Origin: Perkinsus chesapeaki ATCC PRA-425
Lineage: Eukaryota > Protista > Perkinsozoa
DNA length: 44,867 nucleotides
Direction of reading: 5' to 3'
Assembly (NCBI GenBank): GCA_013115145.1
Contig: JAAPAO010000267.1
Span: forward strand, 1-44,867
The notes below the pieces were generated by a model. The model was not told where the DNA came from, ran no database searches, and worked only from the letters and a program-made list of their open reading frames with translations. The first letter of the stretch is position 1. Every line of letters starts with the position of its first letter. This document shows positions 35,031 through 42,981 of the stretch, in pieces. The position numbers were made by a program, and so were the translations under genes.

Positions 35031-35439
35031 CCTTAACGTACAGAAAATGGTTTCAAAAGCTGCAGTATTGGTTTATTTTTATGTTAGAAAAAATAGGGGA
35101 GAAAGAAATAGTTCGTTTTGAATCGTTCATCGTTGCATCACGGGAGCGCTCACATCGTTATTGATGTGTCCTACCAGTTGAAGTATAGGGCGTGCCACCT
35201 CTGTGATAGCGGCGCAGTGCGACTGTGGGCGTTTTCTCAAGATTCCAGTGATCTTATAAGTGACTGTATATGTAGGTGACCTAGCTTGCACCACCAGCTG
35301 TGTGGTTTTGTGTAGTGGCATGCGGTACTTCAGTAGAATCTTCACCAAGTGCCAAGTGCCGTCTCAATGCTTTATATAACAAGTGCTTTGCCCTTCTCTA
35401 TATACTCGCCTATTGACTTCGTTGTAGTTTTTTCATCCT

Positions 35440-38400
35440 ATGCTGGGCGCCGTGCGAGGTTTGCTGCCAAGAGAAGCCCTTGTTGCGAGTGGTACGGGCC
35501 TTTGGAGGCTTGCGATGGTCCGGTTCGGCACCGCTGTTGCCTCCTCCTCCTTGGAGGTGCCGACCCACCATCATCCAGATATGTACCGAGATGATATGAT
35601 TATCAACCTGTATGCAATTCATAGACAAGAGATGCCTAATGTGATGGTCAGCGAGAGGTCTCAACTCAATCGTGGCCAGTAAGTGGTAGATGCCGTGAAC
35701 CGGCTTGGATCACACTAGGAGGGCCTTCCGATAAAGATAGACGTTCCAGATCTTTTCGTCGCTTCTACCCCGCAAGCGAATTGACTAACAATAATCATAC
35801 TACTGATCTCGCTGCAATACGTCATTTCCAATGGTTCCCAAGTACCAAGTATCCAATACCTCCTGCAGTGCATTTTGTCTCTCACAAGGGGAATAATTGC
35901 AGCACATCTTTCATGGTTAGTCTGTTGCAGCAGATTGCTCGGTTGCGGCGGTCTGGCGTGTGTACATTGAAAGATAGAAGGTCCTTCTCACTCGCTTTTG
36001 AGATAGTGTCGTTCCTTTGCTGGGCCAGTCGCCCTTTTCGAAGTTGCCAGGCACGGAATGTCGGACCTGTTTACAAATATGCTGTTAGGATCCCATCGAT
36101 TGTTAATCCTTTGGTCGCCATCAGATTCCACACGACCATTTCGTGGACATTTGGTAACACTTTGGAGACACTGACAGCTGACGGCGTCGATCGCAGCAAA
36201 AAAGGATCGAAAAAAGATGCTGTTAGAAAGCTCATGAGAACCCTTCCTCGGCATGATAAAAGCCTCGGAGTTATGTGGCGACAGATGTCCGGTACACTGG
36301 CCCGGCTCCTAGGGGTAGCTCAGCCGTAGCAATTCGCGCGGTTAAGACAGAGTCGTTGGCAGGTAAAGCAGACGATGAGTCATAACGCTGATCCACGAAC
36401 TGGTCTGGCCACTTGCTTCATAGAGTGGAAGGACGCGGAGGAGCCGTCAAAGTCGTGGATCGGTCGCGGTAGGCAGGGCTGGGCCTGGATTAGTCTACTG
36501 CGTTGGGTTGCAGGTAGCGGAGGCACGAAGGACGAGGCCGAAGTTAACGCTCTTCGTGATGTCTATATATCGGCTGCACCTTACAGAGAGGAAGCAGCTG
36601 TTGCTCAGGTCCAGCGGAGGCATGAAATGCAAAAGGTGAGGTTGGGATCTGTGGAGCTGCAGGAAACTGTCACAGTTGATACCGTCACTGACAGTATCTT
36701 CCAACTTAGAGTATCTAAATCAGCCTTCGATGCCTTGGTCTATTACGTTCACTGCACATGTTTGCTCAGGCCGAGGCAGCTCGAATGGCTTCCGACCTCG
36801 AGGCGGCAGCGTCGATTGGTACGGCCAGTATGCTATCACAGAAGCAAGCTGCCGAGATTATGGTTGCTCACAACTATATGGTGAGAAGGCCTTCTTCCAC
36901 CAGCTCGATCACAATCAATGGTATGCAGACCCAAAGGCTGTTCCACAACCCTTCAGTGAAGCTCCGGTCGAACCTCGTTGTAGTGCCGCATGAGCTCGGC
37001 TACTTGGCGACCTGTGAGTGGAGTTGGTACTCCCGCGAAGATGACCCTGGAAATCCCCGGAAGAGTAGTTCTTCGCGCTGTCCCTTATCCACGCCTGCTA
37101 TCGCACAGTGGTTCTTTTCAGAATCTGCCACCACTAACGGCATCGCCGCCAACCAAAGAGTAGCCAAGGCCGAGGCATGTACCGTCCACTCTCTCCCGGA
37201 ATCCTGGAATACGGCGTTCTTCAGGCCGGCTGATGTTGGAGAAGTACGGCGCTTTGCAGCCGATATCGGCAGAGCAGTGGAGGCTCGCTGACACTATCAA
37301 TGGCCTAGTTGTGTCTTGCAATATTGACCAAGCGGTTCAGAAGGCCGTGGAAGCGATACGCGATACTCCGGTACGATTCACTCTGCATCGGATGGTGACA
37401 GCCTACAAATCCTGGACGTGAAAGCAGCTTTCGGAATGCTCGAGAGCTGAACCCGCTATCCACTATATCCGAGGAGTATCTTTCGAGAACGTCTCTCAAT
37501 TAGCGCAGACATGATGCTCAAGCGTGCTTAATTAGATAAGCGTATAATATGAGGATCTTTTGGAAGACCTTTCATCTGGAAAGCGCTTTATTCAGACCCA
37601 TGTATGGACGTTGTTCCTCCTTAATGTGTGGAGAGCATTGCTGGCTAATGGAGACAGTGCTATGGTGGAGAATCTCCTCTTAGAGTTGGACAGCAGTGAG
37701 CCTAGCTCCGGCGCGATACTGTGTTGCTAGTTCCCTTGTCAGGAACGCGGACTGCTGGTGTCCCAGTGTACCTTTGGGAAGCCATGGTCGACGAGTGCTC
37801 TAATCTCACAGGTCAGCAGTCATCACAGCATGATCGCTTTGTTGAGCCACACGCCCTGGATTGGCCCGCACCGTTTCACATTGGTTGTCAGATTTCGTCT
37901 ACAGCACTGCAGTACTGCAGAGGTTTCTCAAGTCGGCCAAATGTGAAGTGTGGAACGAACATAGTAAAATCCACAAAGCCAGTTGTTCTTCACCAGTGGC
38001 GCATTTCCGCAGGCTTGACCTGGGCGAAGTGGCGCGGCCTGCTCGCATCCGAGCGAATCGGTGTAATCAGGCGCGCTCTAACGGAAAGACAGGAGTTGGG
38101 CATACGGCCCGTGAAGGCGACAATGAAGAGCTGCGTTCTACCGTGAGCTACCAAAGTCCTTTCAAAGCTTCACCAATGCTTGTAGGATTGTTCAAATCGA
38201 TCTTGCGACCGATCTCGCCGCTGAACACGACATGGGCACGGACTCCATGGCCGTGCTATTCCCGGCCGATGGAGAATTCCGGTTGGATTCGTCCAGCGAG
38301 TCCGTAGCTGTAGCCCTTCTCCGCTAGGCGACCTGGTTGTAGCTTGTTTTAGGTGCTGGGCGTTGTGACGAGCTCCAAGAAGGATATAGAGACTGGTATG

Positions 38401-40769
38401 ACCACAGTGACTCTGAAGTTGGCGAGTAAAGTAAGTACGGCGGTTGGTGTGGGAGATTTAGTGTGATGTGTTAGGAGGCAGAGTATGATGCTCGTTTGGG
38501 GGGAAATAATCTGATGGGCAGCGAAGAGATTAATTGCCTCTTCCTGGACGATACAAATGTTACGTAAGGCAGGGTGATCAGAGAAGTTCTACTGTAAAAC
38601 GCACTAGGTGCTTGAGTTGTTTGTAGTAGCATGGCTCCGCTAGCTCAGTAGGCAGAGCGTGTGGCTGTTAACCACAAGGTCGGTGGTTCGAACCCATCGT
38701 GGAGCGTTTTTTCATTTCTTGTCCTGGGGTTCCATATCAACTTGATAGCTAGTTAAACTCTGCTCGGTATCAATCATTCTTCGTATCTTATACCCTCAAT
38801 ACACTGATTACACAGTTTGCGTAACTCACGCCAATCACTGCCTCCACAATGTCTCAAATCTTACCCAACTCTTACACGTTTTCTCAGTTACGCTCGTATG
38901 TGCGATGCCCTCCGTGCTCTCTATGATACACCGAAATGTGACGATGCTATGTTTGTCAACACAGGGGTTGGTATAGCCCAGGGGACCGAGCCAGGAAGGC
39001 AACCGTGCGTTCATGCGTGCAACCTCTGGATACCTTAATTCCGAATATAGTTACTACTTCGATCCTGCCATGAAGGCAGCCTTGTTGGGTAGTGGAGCTG
39101 TAGAACCCCAGAGCTTAGATGACGGCCCTACCGACCTGGGAATGCCATTGACGGATGCCCAGCTGACGGCGGTAGGTACAGTTAGTACTACACGAGGCTC
39201 AGGGTGAGCGTTTCAGATACGTGGTGCGTGGAATACCCCCGTAACGCTGATCCAGGGCCCACCAGGCACGGGAAAGACATACACTGCGGTGGCTCTTGTG
39301 AAGCATTGGGTCGCTAATAAGATTAAAGCTAATGGTGAGCTTGTTGGGGACTGGTTTTGATAGGATGTTATCTGATAGGGGAGGGGAAAATACTGGTAGT
39401 GGCGGACTCCAACGCGGCTGCCGACAACATTCGGGCGTTGATGGTGAAAGCTGGCATCGAGTGCTACAGAGTTGGCCGTGCCCAAGAGACCGATGGTGGA
39501 ACGCGAGAAGTAGGGGATGACGTTCTGAGGAAGCTTGAAGGTACCAGCTGAATCATGATTCTGCTATTAATGACCGAGCAGGCACTCGTGCTGTACGAGA
39601 CTATAGAAGAGCGTTGATCTTGGGAGATGTGCACAAGCTCCCCTATTTCAGGCAGAGGATCGATAAGGCAGCAGTTGAAGAGTGAGGCGTACCTCTTCAT
39701 GCAACGATGATGTCTTATAGGTATCAAGTCCTTGTTGCCACCTGCATCGGAAGCGGCCACCAGCTCCTGGACTCTGTTGACTTTGAGTCTGTAGTTATTG
39801 ATGAATGTACTCAAGCAACGGAGCCTGCCAGCCTAGTACCACTAGCAAGAGGAGCTAAACGTTGCGTGCTATTAGGTCAGCGTCTTCCACGGTCGCGCTT
39901 TTTCTATGCAGCGGCCTGCTTGTTACCGGTGTTAAATTTGTTCAGGTGATCACAAGCAGCTTCCTGCTGCGGTTCATTGCAATGCAGCTAAGAGTGGAGG
40001 GCTGGGCATCAGCCTGTTCGAGCGCCTGGCTACACGAGGAACAGAAGTTCATCTCTTGGACGTCCAACGCAGAATGCATCCAAGCATTGCTGAGTTTTCA
40101 AACAAGCATTTCTACGAGAACAAAATCAAGCACGAGGTGTCCGATCGGCCATTGATTCCAGGCTTACACTGGCCCAATCCGGAGATAAGAGTCGCGCTCG
40201 TTGATACGTCTGAGCTGAGTGCTGAGGAAACCAAAGTGGGCACCAGCTTGATGAACAGGGAAGAAGCTCGCTTGCTGCTTGATGCCTTACACAGTGCGGT
40301 ATCGCATGGGACCATGCCGCATCACATCGGTCTAGTCGTGCCCTACAATGCTCAGAAATCCTATGTGTTATCGGCTCTCCGAGATGATGCCCGCTTTACC
40401 CCCGAACAACGGGCAGCTGTTCAGATCAACACAGTAGATGGGTTCCAGGGTCACGAGAAAGAGCTCATATTCTTCAGCGCTGTACGGTCCAATGAAGCTG
40501 GTCAGGTTGGATTCACTGCTGACCCTCGACGTATGAATGTGATGCTCACTCGAGCTCGCCGCGGACTTGTGGTCTTCTGTGATGTTAACACAATGACCGC
40601 TAGTGGTGGTCATTGGGCTAATTGGGTCGACTGGGTACAGCAAAAGGGAGGCCTGGTTAGCGCCTCCGATTGGAAGTTCAACACCGAAGCTCTGAAGAAC
40701 AGCAGAGACCAATCCACTACGACTTCGCTGAACCGGGAATCGCCCCCTCGCCCGCCGCCGCCCCACTAG
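35440..40769 (+). CDS. UPF1-like superfamily-1 helicase with three N-terminal dsRBD-like repeats (fusion inferred)
   Basis: Helicase: TYARMCDAL, LTDAQLTA, IQGPPGTGKT (GPPGTGKT 39256-39279), DSNAAADN, VIDECTQATEP, GDHKQLP, SLFERL, QRRMHPSI, TVDGFQGHEKE, NVMLTRARR. dsRBD-like segments at ~36035-36250, ~36330-36575 and ~36950-37250. Helicase call is firm; single-gene continuity is moderate. Confidence 0.8.
38634..38706 (+). tRNA. tRNA-Asn (GTT), 73 nt, intronless
   Basis: Acceptor GCTCCGC/GTGGAGC; D arm GCTC..GAGC; anticodon arm TGTGG-CTGTTAA-CCACA; T arm GGTGG-TTCGAAC-CCATC; boxes A and B intact. Confidence 0.97.
38707..38712 (+). terminator. RNA polymerase III oligo-T terminator
   Basis: TTTTTT directly after the tRNA discriminator base. 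Confidence 0.85.
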
Positions 40770-40942: not shown

Positions 40943-42981
40943 ATGTCGGTATGCGTCGCTCTCAAGCCACGGATGACTGCTGGCTTGCTTGCGTGCTTTA
41001 AGGGTGTACTCCGCACACGAGGTCTCGAATGCGTTCACCAGCAACCCCCTAAATCGGAAGTGTCGTTCCTTATCCTCAAGTTGGTCCGTCCAATACGAGG
41101 GGACACTTTTGGAACGATAAGCATCCAGGCCACCACAGCCTACTTGTATTCTGTAACCGCCGATGAGATACCCGAGTTACAAGATAGAGTTAAGGCGACA
41201 ATAACAAAATACACCCGAATCCCGCAAGGAACAAAATTCGGGCGGGACAGGACCGAGACCATGCTGCACAAGATGCCCCTCATCCGCGTTCTTCAACGCT
41301 ATAATATTGTTGGTGACGTCTTCCCGTTGCACACAGAAAGCCGCAATGCTGGTCTATTTGAAGACTATCGTGATCTCAATATGTGAGTCATCTATAGGGT
41401 GTGTTTTTGAACGTCTTTCCTTTAGGTATTACGGTGATTCGATTGGCTACTATTTTGGTTTTCTGTCAGTCTATACAAGGTGGTTATCAGTACTAGCGTT
41501 AGTAGGCCTCATCATTGCCTTTACTAACCATCTACAAATGGACAGCAAGTGGATAATCATGAGCATCTTGACGACTCTGTGGGGCTTGTTGCTCATGGAC
41601 GTAGGATGGGTCACCAGAAAGTAAGTCTGACCCATATGAAGCCCCTGTTGTTGAGTTCTATTCTGCTTTTCAGGGCATCGCTCAAACGCCAATGGGATGC
41701 GCCGCGTTCTTCCCTTAAACATATCCGGTCTCAAGCCATGGACGACATACTCGACGACGTTGCAACACAGAGCCTTTACGTCGACAACTCGGTCTCATCA
41801 ACTCATTTTGGACTTGTCTTACGGAGACTACTTAGCGCGGTAGGCCATACGGGGCTGTCTTAGAATGGTATTGCATCTTCTAGTCCACGTGGTGCTTGCG
41901 CCAAAGGATGATGACCTCCGATAATTCCTTTCAGGTTCTACTTGCCCTTTCGCTACTAGCTTCATGTGCATTATTAATGTGGACACTCCACATCGAACGA
42001 ACCTACTCGGTTGATCCTATGATAGTATCCGTCATCTATTCTGTGGTGCGGGTATTCCTCTCCTCGGCCTTCAAGTCTTTTGCTAACTGGCTCACAAAGA
42101 TTGAGCATCACATTGATGACGAGAATTTTATGATTTCCGAAGCATCCAAGGAAATAATATTCGAAGTCTTTAATGTCTTCGTGCCTCCCATTTGGATGGC
42201 TTTTGTTATTCTTGATTTCGAACGCCTTCGTAGAGAAGTAACAGTCATGTTCACGACACGGCAAGTGGTATCAGCTTTGACCGAAGCAGTCCCAACTCTA
42301 CTAGCAAGATTACTAACTAAGAGGAAACACTTGGCGCCGCTCACAGCCGCCGCCCAGCAAGCACTGCCTGAATGGGAGCTCTGGCGTGAGTACCTCGAGA
42401 TGGCGATCCAGCTTGCTCAACTGGTAGCATTCGGTCCCCTTTTCCCGCTCGCCTTCATTCTCGCTTACGTTAACGATTTGGTAGAGTTCCGGCTCGATGC
42501 TATCAAGTTAAATTCAAGCCGACGACCATATCCTCGAAATGAAGCGATGAGCTCCTTCTGGACAAACGTATTCAACAGTATGGTGCTGTTCGGTGCGTCT
42601 ATCAACGTTTTCCTCCTTATTGTTCATTGCCAAACTTTGGCATCATTGGACGAGTCGATGGTTAACCGTCTCGGCGTTGGTATTATCTTGGAGAAGTTCT
42701 TCGTCGTTGTTCGTGTATTCGTGGCTATTGCAATTCCCAAGGCGAACGAATGGCAGGAGGACGCCAGGATGCCTCTGGCCGAATCCACCGAGTTGGCAGA
42801 GATTGTTGCACGCGCATCAGCTCATTTGGAACTGCCTTTCCCTGATGTGGACCAGAAGGATGCGACACTTATCGAAATGATAGATACTGATATTGAAGCT
42901 TTGATTTCCCGAATGGCTATTCTACGGAACCGTAAGAGCGTTCAAGTGAAGCCAGACCAAGACGAATGCAAAGAAGAGTGA
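40943..42981 (+). CDS. Anoctamin/TMEM16 family channel or scramblase (start uncertain)
   Basis: VFPLH; YYGDSIGYYFGFL..YTRWL; EYLEMAIQLAQLVAFGPLFPLAFILAYVNDLVEFRLDAIKL..SRRPYP; multiple TM helices. Confidence 0.9.

What the first reader, a model, noticed from the sequence alone, without database searches (positions are those of the whole stretch)
35440..40769. Triple-dsRBD plus UPF1-like helicase: an unusual RNA-helicase architecture
Seen: three segments fit the dsRBD pattern: CQARNVGPVYKY..FHTTISW..ADGVDRSKKGSKKDAVRKLMRTL; CFIEW..GRG|SGGTKDEAEVNALRDVY; ATCEWSW..NGIAANQRVAKAEAC|RLMLEKYGAL. A helical region follows, then a 1B-like segment and a complete SF1B core; I saw no UPF1 Cys/His (CH) domain. 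Established: dsRBD-helicase fusions are typical of SF2 DExH proteins (DHX9, DHX30), not of UPF1, SETX, MOV10 or IGHMBP2. Inference: a dsRNA-targeted 5'-3' helicase acting in silencing, antiviral defence or organellar RNA processing. Best candidate for a novel system in this window.
Basis: partly seen in the sequence, partly recalled or inferred. Interest (0 to 1): 0.8.

Follow-up and report, generated by a model that had tools for sequence, protein, structure and literature searches.

The report
Triple-dsRBD UPF1-like RNA helicase gene
This Perkinsus gene most likely makes one roughly 1,119-residue protein that joins three double-stranded-RNA-binding domains to a UPF1-type RNA-unwinding motor, a design shared by dinoflagellates and by apicomplexan parasites such as Neospora, Eimeria and Babesia, and I found no paper that describes it.

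Summary
Window 35440-40769 (+) can be spliced into one 22-exon gene with GT-AG introns throughout and a 1,119-aa product. Every exon is collinear with and conserved in Perkinsus marinus.

- **One chain.** The N-terminal 640 aa are homologous over their whole length to single-chain proteins of Neospora, Babesia, Polarella, Rhytidocystis and others. Several of these come from transcript assemblies.
- **Three dsRBDs.** Family profiles of the three N-terminal modules, built without the window sequence, hit essentially only dsRBD proteins in the PDB (Staufen1 2e-9, Loquacious 9e-6, TARBP2 1e-3). They match the window protein at E 7e-21, 2e-9 and 5e-19.
- **Fold.** An AlphaFold model of a homolog shows three alpha-beta-beta-beta-alpha modules. 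Its best structural matches are the triple-dsRBD proteins TARBP2 and Loqs-PB.
- **Helicase half.** Next come a family-specific helical domain, a UPF1/SETX-like 1B barrel and stalk, and a complete SF1B core. The core is closest to UPF1, and no CH domain was found.
The true start of that domain is in exon 1.

Function is inferred: a duplex-anchored 5'-3' RNA helicase, possibly mitochondrial. RNAi is an unlikely core role. No transcript data could be obtained for this species. I class it as a new variant of a known kind. The same stretch was listed once before in this scan (s1-218123).

The parts
35440..35577 (+). Start codon and N-terminal leader (aa 1-46). It is basic and Ala/Ser/Thr/Leu-rich with few acidic residues, so it may be a mitochondrial presequence.
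   Evidence: The ORF opens at 35428 and the first ATG is at 35440. The P. marinus leader differs in sequence but has a similar composition. Many homologs have similar leaders. Targeting is inferred, not tested.
35578..36254 (+). dsRBD1 (aa 47-123), split by intron 1. Exon 1 part is 35578-35678 (alpha1, beta1). Exon 2 part is 36125-36254 (beta2, beta3, alpha2 with a KKxxKK motif).
   Evidence: Family profile A1 matches aa 47-123 at E 7e-21. A1 hits Staufen1 at 2e-9, Loquacious, MLE and TARBP2 in the PDB. Both exons are conserved in P. marinus at 64-82% aa identity.
36267..36581 (+). dsRBD2 (aa 128-201) across exons 2-4 (36267-36314, 36363-36468, 36514-36581). Helix alpha2 starts with TKDEAE, which is acidic, so this is a non-canonical (type-B-like) dsRBD.
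   Evidence: Profile A2 matches aa 128-201 at E 2.4e-9. A2 hits Loquacious at 8.8e-6 and TARBP2 at 5e-4 in the PDB. hhalign of A1 against A2 gives 95.6% probability.
36824..37277 (+). dsRBD3 (aa 238-338) across exons 5-8 (36824-36880, 36929-37064, 37122-37178, 37225-37277).
   Evidence: Profile A3 matches as one domain at E 5.5e-19 once the 57-nt intron 37065-37121 is removed. With that intron kept the match splits into two pieces of 23 and 21 bits. A3 hits TARBP2 at 1.4e-3 and Staufen1 at 1.9e-3. hhalign of A1 against A3 gives 97.3%.
37278..38142 (+). Family-specific alpha-helical domain (aa ~339-492). It covers the rest of exon 8 and exons 9-12 (37596-37695, 37743-37811, 37892-37963, 38013-38142). 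It sits where UPF1 carries its CH domain.
   Evidence: The stretch is conserved in all family members. The AF2 model of the homolog has 8 helices at pLDDT about 90. The only weak sequence hit is to the PPR protein LRPPRC, E 0.014. No confident separate structural match to the helical part stood out.
38186..39171 (+). 1B beta-barrel, stalk and 1C-like region up to motif Q (aa ~493-667). Exons 13-17 are 38186-38303, 38353-38430, 38475-38563, 38888-39004 and 39051-39171.
   Evidence: The homolog model of this region matches SETX at 2e-4 and UPF1 at 2e-4 to 5e-4 by Foldseek. All five exons are conserved in P. marinus.
39217..39875 (+). RecA1 of the SF1B core. Exons 18-21 are 39217-39334 (motif I, GPPGTGKT), 39379-39540 (Ia), 39582-39681 and 39721-39875 (motif II, DECTQ).
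   Evidence: Pfam AAA_11 hits these pieces. The motifs were located. The exon junctions agree with P. marinus protein XP_002781732.1 (P0001).
39946..40769 (+). RecA2 (motifs III-VI) and a C-terminal Pro-rich tail, in exon 22, with the stop codon at 40767-40769.
   Evidence: Pfam AAA_12 hits at E 3e-53. The nearest solved structures are UPF1 at 8e-38, then IGHMBP2 and SETX at about 5e-29.

Best explanation
Window 35440-40769 (+) is one 22-exon nuclear gene of a Perkinsus species. Earlier notes of this scan name the species P. chesapeaki.

Its roughly 1,119-aa product has this order of parts:
1. a short basic leader;
2. three dsRBDs;
3. a family-specific helical domain;
4. a UPF1/SETX-type 1B barrel and stalk;
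5. a complete UPF1-like SF1B ATPase core;
6. a proline-rich tail.

It belongs to a family found so far only in Myzozoa: perkinsids, dinoflagellates, coccidia, piroplasms and gregarine-like apicomplexans.

Most likely mechanism (inferred from the domains, not shown):
- dsRBD1 (canonical KKxxKK helix) and probably dsRBD3 anchor the enzyme, without sequence preference, on A-form RNA duplexes.
- The degenerate dsRBD2 and the helical domain act as a regulatory or docking surface.
- The SF1B motor loads on adjacent single-stranded RNA and moves 5' to 3' using ATP. It would unwind the bound duplex or strip proteins from it.
- In effect this is a Staufen-like dsRNA reader fused in cis to a UPF1-like motor.

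I put about 50% on the site of action being the mitochondrion. Myzozoan mitochondria carry fragmented rRNAs and sense/antisense transcripts.
For: Gene model:
- 22 exons, all with GT-AG introns, mostly 39-80 nt, and no internal stop.
- Every exon is collinear with and conserved in P. marinus scaffold GG675180.1.

Single chain:
- The window's N-terminal 640 aa align over their whole length with proteins that carry the helicase in the same chain: P0088 1e-27, P0002 4e-26, P0148, Rhytidocystis P0010, Neospora P0013, Polarella P0005, Babesia P0030.
- Some of these are ORFs from transcript assemblies, marked 'complete' for Rhytidocystis and Digyalum.

dsRBDs:
- Profiles A1-A3, built without the window sequence, hit essentially only dsRBD proteins in the PDB.
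- They hit the window protein at 7e-21, 2.4e-9 and 5.5e-19.
- The three modules are homologous to one another (hhalign 88-97%).
- The AF2 model of the homolog N-terminus has pLDDT 86 and three alpha-beta-beta-beta-alpha units. Its best Foldseek hits are TARBP2 at 1e-10 and Loqs-PB at 1e-9.
- Pfam dsrm reaches its gathering score in P0002 (24.0 bits) and P0013 (25.1 bits).

Helicase:
- AAA_11 and AAA_12 hit, the latter at 3e-53.
- All motifs are intact.
- The nearest solved structure is UPF1 at 8e-38.
- The 1B/stalk region is like UPF1 and SETX.

Leader: basic and acid-poor in the window, in P. marinus and in many homologs.

Analogy: in the DExH helicase MLE, dsRBD2 places dsRNA at the helicase entrance (PMC11498004).
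Against: - There is no transcript evidence from this species. The two runs offered held nothing.
- The P. marinus annotation splits the locus into three gene models of 309, 143 and 503 aa.
- Pfam dsrm does not hit the window's unspliced pieces.
- I could not hand the spliced window protein to Pfam or to AlphaFold, so fold evidence is from homologs that are only about 25-30% identical in the N-terminus.
- dsRBD2 lacks the basic helix, and dsRBD3 of the window has QRxxK in place of the family's Kxx(A)K/R. RNA binding by these two is uncertain.
- Some members have long or acidic leaders (Neospora, P0020, P0028), which speaks against a universal mitochondrial location.
- Polarity, substrate and location are all inferred.
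Confidence: 0.75

Rival explanations
1. Same protein, but cytosolic. It would be a self-contained version of Staufen-mediated decay, in which the dsRBD array reads structured or duplexed regions of mRNAs and the fused UPF1-like motor remodels the mRNP for decay or translational control.
For: The best PDB match of the dsRBD1 profile is Staufen1, and the motor is closest to UPF1. It is established that Staufen1 recruits UPF1 in mammals (my own knowledge). Dinoflagellate members carry a C-terminal WW domain, and the window protein ends in a PPxPPPP tail, both typical of cytosolic or nuclear interaction networks. The Neospora, P0020 and P0028 leaders do not look like presequences.
Against: Many members, including both Perkinsus species, have short, basic, acid-poor leaders directly before dsRBD1. 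There is no CH domain for UPF2-type regulation. No experimental data exist either way.
Confidence: 0.3
2. An RNA-silencing or antiviral helicase that works with Dicer and Argonaute on dsRNA, like MOV10/SDE3/Armitage combined with a TRBP/Loqs-type partner.
For: The N-terminal array is structurally most like TARBP2, Loqs-PB and R2D2, which are Dicer partners. UPF1-like helicases act in several RNAi pathways (my own knowledge).
Against: The family is conserved in Babesia, while apicomplexan genomes in general lack Dicer and Argonaute (PMC2699523; Babesia itself was not among the genomes named there). A pathway-specific factor should be lost along with the pathway.
Confidence: 0.08
3. Two or three separate genes, as annotated in P. 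marinus: a small triple-dsRBD protein and an independent helicase. The 22-exon fusion would then be an artefact of my model.
For: The P. marinus annotation has three models. There is no RNA evidence here. A same-strand tRNA-Asn gene lies in the 324-nt gap between exons 15 and 16.
Against: All junctions keep the reading frame with canonical GT-AG sites. Homologs from transcript assemblies carry both halves in one ORF and align continuously across every junction. The P. marinus 503-aa model starts at an internal Met within a conserved exon and lacks the 1B and stalk regions that an SF1B core needs.
Confidence: 0.05
4. The three dsRBD folds no longer bind RNA. They would act as protein-protein or auto-inhibitory modules, like type-B dsRBDs such as TRBP dsRBD3 or Staufen dsRBD5, that take over the regulatory job of the UPF1 CH domain.
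For: dsRBD2 has an acidic alpha2 start. Pfam dsrm scores are at or below threshold throughout the family. The PDB E-values for dsRBD3 are marginal.
Against: dsRBD1 keeps the SKKxxKK helix and a His in the beta1-beta2 loop. The family consensus of dsRBD1 and dsRBD3 keeps GxGxSK..A(K/R).
Confidence: 0.15

Closest known systems
UPF1 / NAM7 (SF1B, UPF1-like family; PDB 2xzo, 2xzl)
   Same: RecA1/RecA2 core with all motifs. It is the nearest solved sequence (E 8e-38 on RecA2). It has a 1B barrel and stalk before RecA1.
   Different: No CH (UPF1_Zn_bind) domain and no SQ-rich tail. The N-terminus is three dsRBDs plus a family-specific helical domain. It is not the NMD factor's ortholog.
TARBP2 (TRBP) / Loquacious-PB / Staufen1: multi-dsRBD RNA-binding proteins
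   Same: Three consecutive alpha-beta-beta-beta-alpha dsRBDs, with one degenerate module. These are the top structural and profile matches.
   Different: Those proteins have no enzymatic domain and recruit Dicer or UPF1 in trans. Here the array is covalently joined to the helicase.
MLE / DHX9 (RNA helicase A), DHX30: dsRBD-bearing DExH (SF2) helicases
   Same: N-terminal dsRBDs feed a processive RNA helicase. MLE dsRBD1/2 are among the top fold and profile hits. They offer a mechanistic precedent for a dsRBD placing a duplex at the motor entrance (PMC11498004).
   Different: A different superfamily (SF2 DExH, 3'-5') with HA2/OB domains and two dsRBDs. Here the motor is SF1B, expected to run 5'-3', with three dsRBDs.
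SETX/Sen1, IGHMBP2, ZNFX1, MOV10: other UPF1-like helicases with accessory RNA-binding modules
   Same: The same core and 1B architecture, and the principle of lineage-specific N- or C-terminal accessory domains.
   Different: Their accessory domains are a helical N-terminal domain, R3H/AN1, NFX1 zinc fingers or a CH-like domain. None is known to carry dsRBDs (my own knowledge; my literature searches were negative).

Membership tests
dsRBD (Pfam PF00035 dsrm) | alpha1-beta1-beta2-beta3-alpha2 fold | tested here: met
   The AF2 model of homolog P0088:25-325 has three such units (pLDDT 86). Foldseek top hits are TARBP2, Loqs-PB, MLE, R2D2 and DGCR8. The window protein is tied to that model by profiles at E 7e-21, 2e-9 and 5e-19. 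The window protein itself was not folded.
dsRBD (Pfam PF00035 dsrm) | Significant match to dsRBD sequence models | tested here: inconclusive
   Pfam dsrm gave no hit on the window's unspliced pieces. It scored 24.0 and 25.1 bits (cut-off 23) in homologs P0002 and P0013, and 20-21 bits in P0004 and P0005. Family profiles against the PDB gave essentially only dsRBD proteins, at 2e-9, 9e-6 and 1e-3.
dsRBD (Pfam PF00035 dsrm) | RNA-contact motifs (His in the beta1-beta2 loop; KKxAK at the start of alpha2) | tested here: inconclusive
   dsRBD1 has SKKGSKK and a His, so it meets the motif. dsRBD3 has QRVAK, which is partial. dsRBD2 has TKDEAE, which does not meet it. Binding itself cannot be tested with these tools.
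UPF1-like SF1B helicases | Motifs Q, I, Ia, II, III, IV, V and VI in two RecA domains | tested here: met
   All were located in the spliced model. AAA_11 and AAA_12 hit, the latter at 3e-53.
UPF1-like SF1B helicases | 1B beta-barrel and stalk inserted before or within RecA1 | tested here: met
   The AF2 model of the homolog's middle part has a barrel plus helices. It matches SETX and UPF1. The barrel's pLDDT is only about 60.
UPF1-like SF1B helicases | ATP-dependent 5'-3' translocation on RNA | not testable with these tools
   Inferred from family membership only.
UPF1 proper (NMD factor) | N-terminal CH zinc-knuckle domain (UPF1_Zn_bind) that binds UPF2 | tested here: not met
   Pfam reported no UPF1_Zn_bind hit in the window pieces (E<=1) or in eight full-length homologs (E<=0.01). 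The corresponding position holds dsRBDs and a helical domain.
Nuclear-encoded mitochondrial protein | Cleavable amphipathic, basic N-terminal presequence; organellar location | tested here: inconclusive
   Leader composition fits in the window, P. marinus, Polarella and several transcript-derived members, but not in all. No predictor or localisation data were available.

The most novel reading that the evidence does not exclude
Myzozoa possess a dedicated mitochondrial 'dsRNA reader plus SF1B motor' enzyme. Its three dsRBDs would recognise the duplexes formed by fragmented rRNA pieces or by sense/antisense transcripts of their scrambled mitochondrial genomes. Its UPF1-like helicase would resolve or clear them. 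This would be a lineage-specific counterpart of the SUV3-type dsRNA surveillance of other eukaryotes, and a parasite-specific essential enzyme.
Probability: 0.3. Interest if true: 0.75.

Novelty: new variant of a known kind. Interest (0 to 1): 0.55.

Why it matters
dsRBD-helicase fusions are textbook only for SF2 DExH enzymes such as DHX9/MLE and DHX30. This family shows the same solution reached with an SF1B UPF1-like motor, which is expected to run in the opposite direction.

The family is conserved across perkinsids, dinoflagellates and apicomplexans, including veterinary and medical parasites (Neospora, Eimeria, Cyclospora, Babesia). Public annotation calls these proteins only 'putative ATP-dependent helicase/NAM7', and no listed member carries a precomputed dsrm domain. 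The architecture has therefore gone unrecognised.

It gives a concrete candidate for how these organisms handle double-stranded or highly structured RNA without RNAi. It may also bear on how they manage their unusual mitochondrial transcriptomes. No close relative from animals appeared among the hits I could name, which makes it a possible drug target.

The analysis also shows that the P. marinus locus is split into three gene models and supplies a corrected model.

Tried and rejected
- Pfam on raw ORF pieces gave no dsrm hit. The domains are split by introns.
- Transcript evidence failed. Only two small runs of the species label were offered, and nothing could be laid on the stretch.
- The search for homologous proteins with the stop-free stretch 36719-37288 found nothing. 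With the full-length family alignment it found only a few more members, and none had a precomputed dsrm domain.
- My first reading of the exon after the 1B barrel (frame 2, beginning 38977 or 38995) was wrong. Comparison with P. marinus showed an extra exon at 38475-38563 and the correct frame at 38888-39004.
- The 21-exon model, with a 19-aa insertion in dsRBD3, was replaced by the 22-exon model.
- The helical domain gave only a weak LRPPRC (PPR) hit at E 0.014. No convincing separate structural match to it stood out, so I make no PPR claim.
- The ESM Atlas search gave only sub-threshold leads to 1B-barrel families.
- In the literature, the Toxoplasma mitochondrial helicase TgmRHel (bioRxiv 10.64898/2026.05.29.728635) is a DEAD-box protein and a different family. 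No paper was found on dsRBD plus UPF1-like helicases.
- I did not type the spliced protein into Pfam or AlphaFold, because no reference exists for a spliced product. That step was left out.

Full report
**What is in the sequence.**
The window is eukaryotic DNA with short introns. Between 35300 and 41000 the + strand holds many stop-free pieces in changing frames. The last piece (39936-40766) is a strong AAA_12 match at E 3e-53, and earlier pieces carry AAA_11 and the Walker A motif.

A HMMER search of that last piece against 1.84 billion representative proteins gave P0001 as the best hit, at 82% identity. P0001 is a 503-aa protein of Perkinsus marinus, XP_002781732.1. Its genomic locus is L001, on scaffold GG675180.1. 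L001 is collinear with the window from 35554 to 40634 by blastn.

tblastx shows which frame is conserved in each block. Earlier notes of this scan name the genome Perkinsus chesapeaki. The 82% identity and the shared gene order with P. marinus fit a Perkinsus species.

**Gene model.**
I used the conserved frames and canonical splice sites to assemble a coding sequence, first with 21 exons and then with 22. It runs from the ATG at 35440 to the TAG at 40767-40769.
- It encodes 1,119 aa with no internal stop.
- Every intron is GT-AG. Most are 39-80 nt. The longer ones are 446, 134, 225 and 324 nt.
- Every exon is matched, in order, in P. marinus.

The 22nd exon boundary is a 57-nt intron at 37065-37121.
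- It sits at the same position and phase as an intron of about 380 nt in P. marinus that has a GTAAGT donor.
- Removing it turns a split match to the family profile of dsRBD3 (23 + 21 bits) into one match of 54.5 bits.

The residues on either side of it are contiguous in all homologs.

**One protein or several?**
The P. marinus annotation splits the locus into models of 309, 143 and 503 aa. No RNA data could be laid on the window. Three lines of evidence favour one protein.
- The window's N-terminal 640 aa are homologous over their whole length to the N-terminal parts of proteins that carry the helicase in the same chain. These are P0088 at 1e-27, P0002 at 4e-26, P0148 at 1e-24, P0010 at 4e-23, P0013 at 5e-22 and P0005 at 8e-21.
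- The named members are all Myzozoa: Neospora caninum, Eimeria acervulina, Cyclospora cayetanensis, two Babesia species, Polarella glacialis, Durusdinium trenchii, Rhytidocystis and Digyalum.
- Several are ORFs from transcript assemblies. That is transcript-level evidence from relatives that both halves lie on one mRNA.

**The three N-terminal modules.**
I cut the three modules out of the homologs, leaving out the window sequence, and aligned them as A1, A2 and A3.

| Module | Best PDB hits of the family profile | Match to the window protein |
|---|---|---|
| dsRBD1 (A1) | Staufen1 2e-9, Loquacious 3e-7, MLE, TARBP2 | aa 47-123, E 7e-21 |
| dsRBD2 (A2) | Loquacious 8.8e-6, TARBP2 5e-4 | aa 128-201, E 2.4e-9 |
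| dsRBD3 (A3) | TARBP2 1.4e-3, Staufen1 1.9e-3 | aa 238-338, E 5.5e-19 |

As HMMs searched against the PDB, these profiles hit almost nothing but dsRBD proteins. Only A3 had two unrelated chance hits, with E above 0.2. The profiles are also homologous to one another. hhalign gives 97.3% for A1-A3, 95.6% for A1-A2 and 88% for A2-A3.

An AlphaFold2 model of the N-terminus of the closest full homolog, P0088:25-325, used an 18-row alignment. It has mean pLDDT 86 and three alpha-beta-beta-beta-alpha units. Foldseek ranks the triple-dsRBD proteins TARBP2 (1e-10, 291 columns) and Loqs-PB (1e-9) first. MLE dsRBD1/2, R2D2, DGCR8, NF90 and PKR follow. Pfam's own dsrm model reaches its cut-off in P0002 and P0013 and falls just below it in P0004 and P0005.

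Its 'CQARNVGPVYKY' piece is intronic, however, and P. marinus has a stop codon in that stretch. The true alpha1-beta1 of dsRBD1 lies in exon 1.

The RNA-contact motifs differ between the modules.
- dsRBD1 keeps an SKKxxKK helix and a loop His.
- dsRBD3 keeps part of the motif.
- dsRBD2 is acidic there and looks like a type-B (non-binding) dsRBD.

**The rest of the protein.**
After dsRBD3 comes a helical domain of about 150 aa that is conserved throughout the family. The homolog model shows 8 helices at pLDDT about 90. The only database echo is a weak LRPPRC match at E 0.014, and I make no claim from it.

A beta-barrel and helices follow. Together they match SETX and UPF1 (Foldseek 2e-4 to 5e-4). 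This is the 1B/stalk arrangement of UPF1-like helicases.

The core has motifs Q, I, Ia, II, III, IV, V and VI intact. It is closest to UPF1 among solved structures (8e-38). IGHMBP2 and SETX come next at about 5e-29, then Sen1, DNA2, ZNFX1 and Aquarius. No CH domain is detected, so this is not the NMD factor itself.

The protein ends in a proline-rich tail. Dinoflagellate relatives carry a WW domain at that end.

**How it most likely works.**
Shown here:
- the architecture;
- its conservation across Myzozoa;
- intact catalytic motifs.

Inferred from established knowledge of dsRBDs and UPF1-like helicases:
- The dsRBD array tethers the enzyme to A-form RNA duplexes without sequence specificity.
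- The motor engages flanking single-stranded RNA and moves 5' to 3' with ATP, unwinding the duplex or displacing proteins.
- MLE/DHX9, where dsRBD2 places dsRNA at the helicase entrance (PMC11498004), is the mechanistic precedent from another superfamily.
- Staufen recruiting UPF1 in trans is the functional analogy (my own knowledge).

**Where it works.**
The leaders in front of dsRBD1 are short, basic, rich in Ala/Ser/Thr and poor in acidic residues. This holds for the window, P. marinus, Polarella and several transcript-derived members. The two Perkinsus leaders differ in sequence but agree in composition. That pattern is typical of mitochondrial presequences.
- No hydrophobic signal peptide is evident in these leaders by eye, which speaks against a plastid route.
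- The pattern does not hold for all members; Neospora, P0020 and P0028 differ.

I put about 50% on a mitochondrial role and about 30% on a cytosolic Staufen-UPF1-like role.

An RNAi role is unlikely as the conserved function. Babesia keeps the gene, whereas apicomplexan genomes generally lack Dicer and Argonaute (PMC2699523; Babesia itself is not named in that paper).

**Novelty.**
Full-text searches returned nothing on this architecture. The terms covered combinations of UPF1-like/SF1/NAM7, dsRBD/dsrm/AAA_12, Apicomplexa/Toxoplasma and mitochondria. The one promising title, TgmRHel, is a DEAD-box protein.

Public names are generic: 'putative ATP-dependent helicase', 'NAM7', 'WW domain-containing protein', 'conserved hypothetical protein'. 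None of the family members listed with precomputed Pfam domains carries dsrm.

I therefore rate it a new variant of a known kind: a UPF1-like helicase with an unrecognised triple-dsRBD front end. It is conserved in a major eukaryotic lineage, so it is not a peculiarity of this window.

**Limits.**
- There is no RNA evidence for this species.
- The taxonomic range outside the named Myzozoa was not tested.
- Substrate, polarity and location are inferred.

Noticed in passing
window 38634-38706 (+); L001 9807-9880 (+): A tRNA-Asn(GTT) gene lies on the same strand inside the 324-nt intron between exons 15 and 16 of the helicase gene, followed by a T run. The same intronic tRNA is present in the P. 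marinus ortholog, so the nesting is conserved.
   Followed up: partly
window 41896-42981 (+): The next gene downstream is an anoctamin/TMEM16-type channel or scramblase (Pfam Anoctamin, E 5e-37 on one large exon). Smaller conserved-looking ORFs from about 40943 onwards may be its upstream exons.
   Followed up: partly
L001 6155-11797 (P. marinus GG675180.1): The public P. marinus annotation splits the ortholog into three gene models of 309, 143 and 503 aa. The 503-aa model (XP_002781732.1) starts at an internal Met of a conserved exon. This looks like an annotation error, not biology.
   Followed up: partly
P0160 (Durusdinium trenchii, 1783 aa): A protein annotated 'Isocitrate lyase' contains this dsRBD-helicase family (dsRBD profiles hit at aa 388-658) together with ICL domains. 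It is probably a merged gene model of two neighbouring genes.
   Followed up: no
P0004, P0006, P0011, P0161 (dinoflagellate-type members); window 40737-40766: Dinoflagellate relatives end in a WW domain, whereas the Perkinsus protein ends in a proline-rich PPxPPPP tail, which is a WW/SH3-ligand-like sequence. The meaning is unknown.
   Followed up: no
P0020, P0028, P0149: Some UPF1-like helicases among the top hits match only the dsRBD1 profile and not dsRBD2 or dsRBD3. Two of them (P0020, P0028) have acidic or long leaders. They may form a sister family with a single dsRBD.
   Followed up: no
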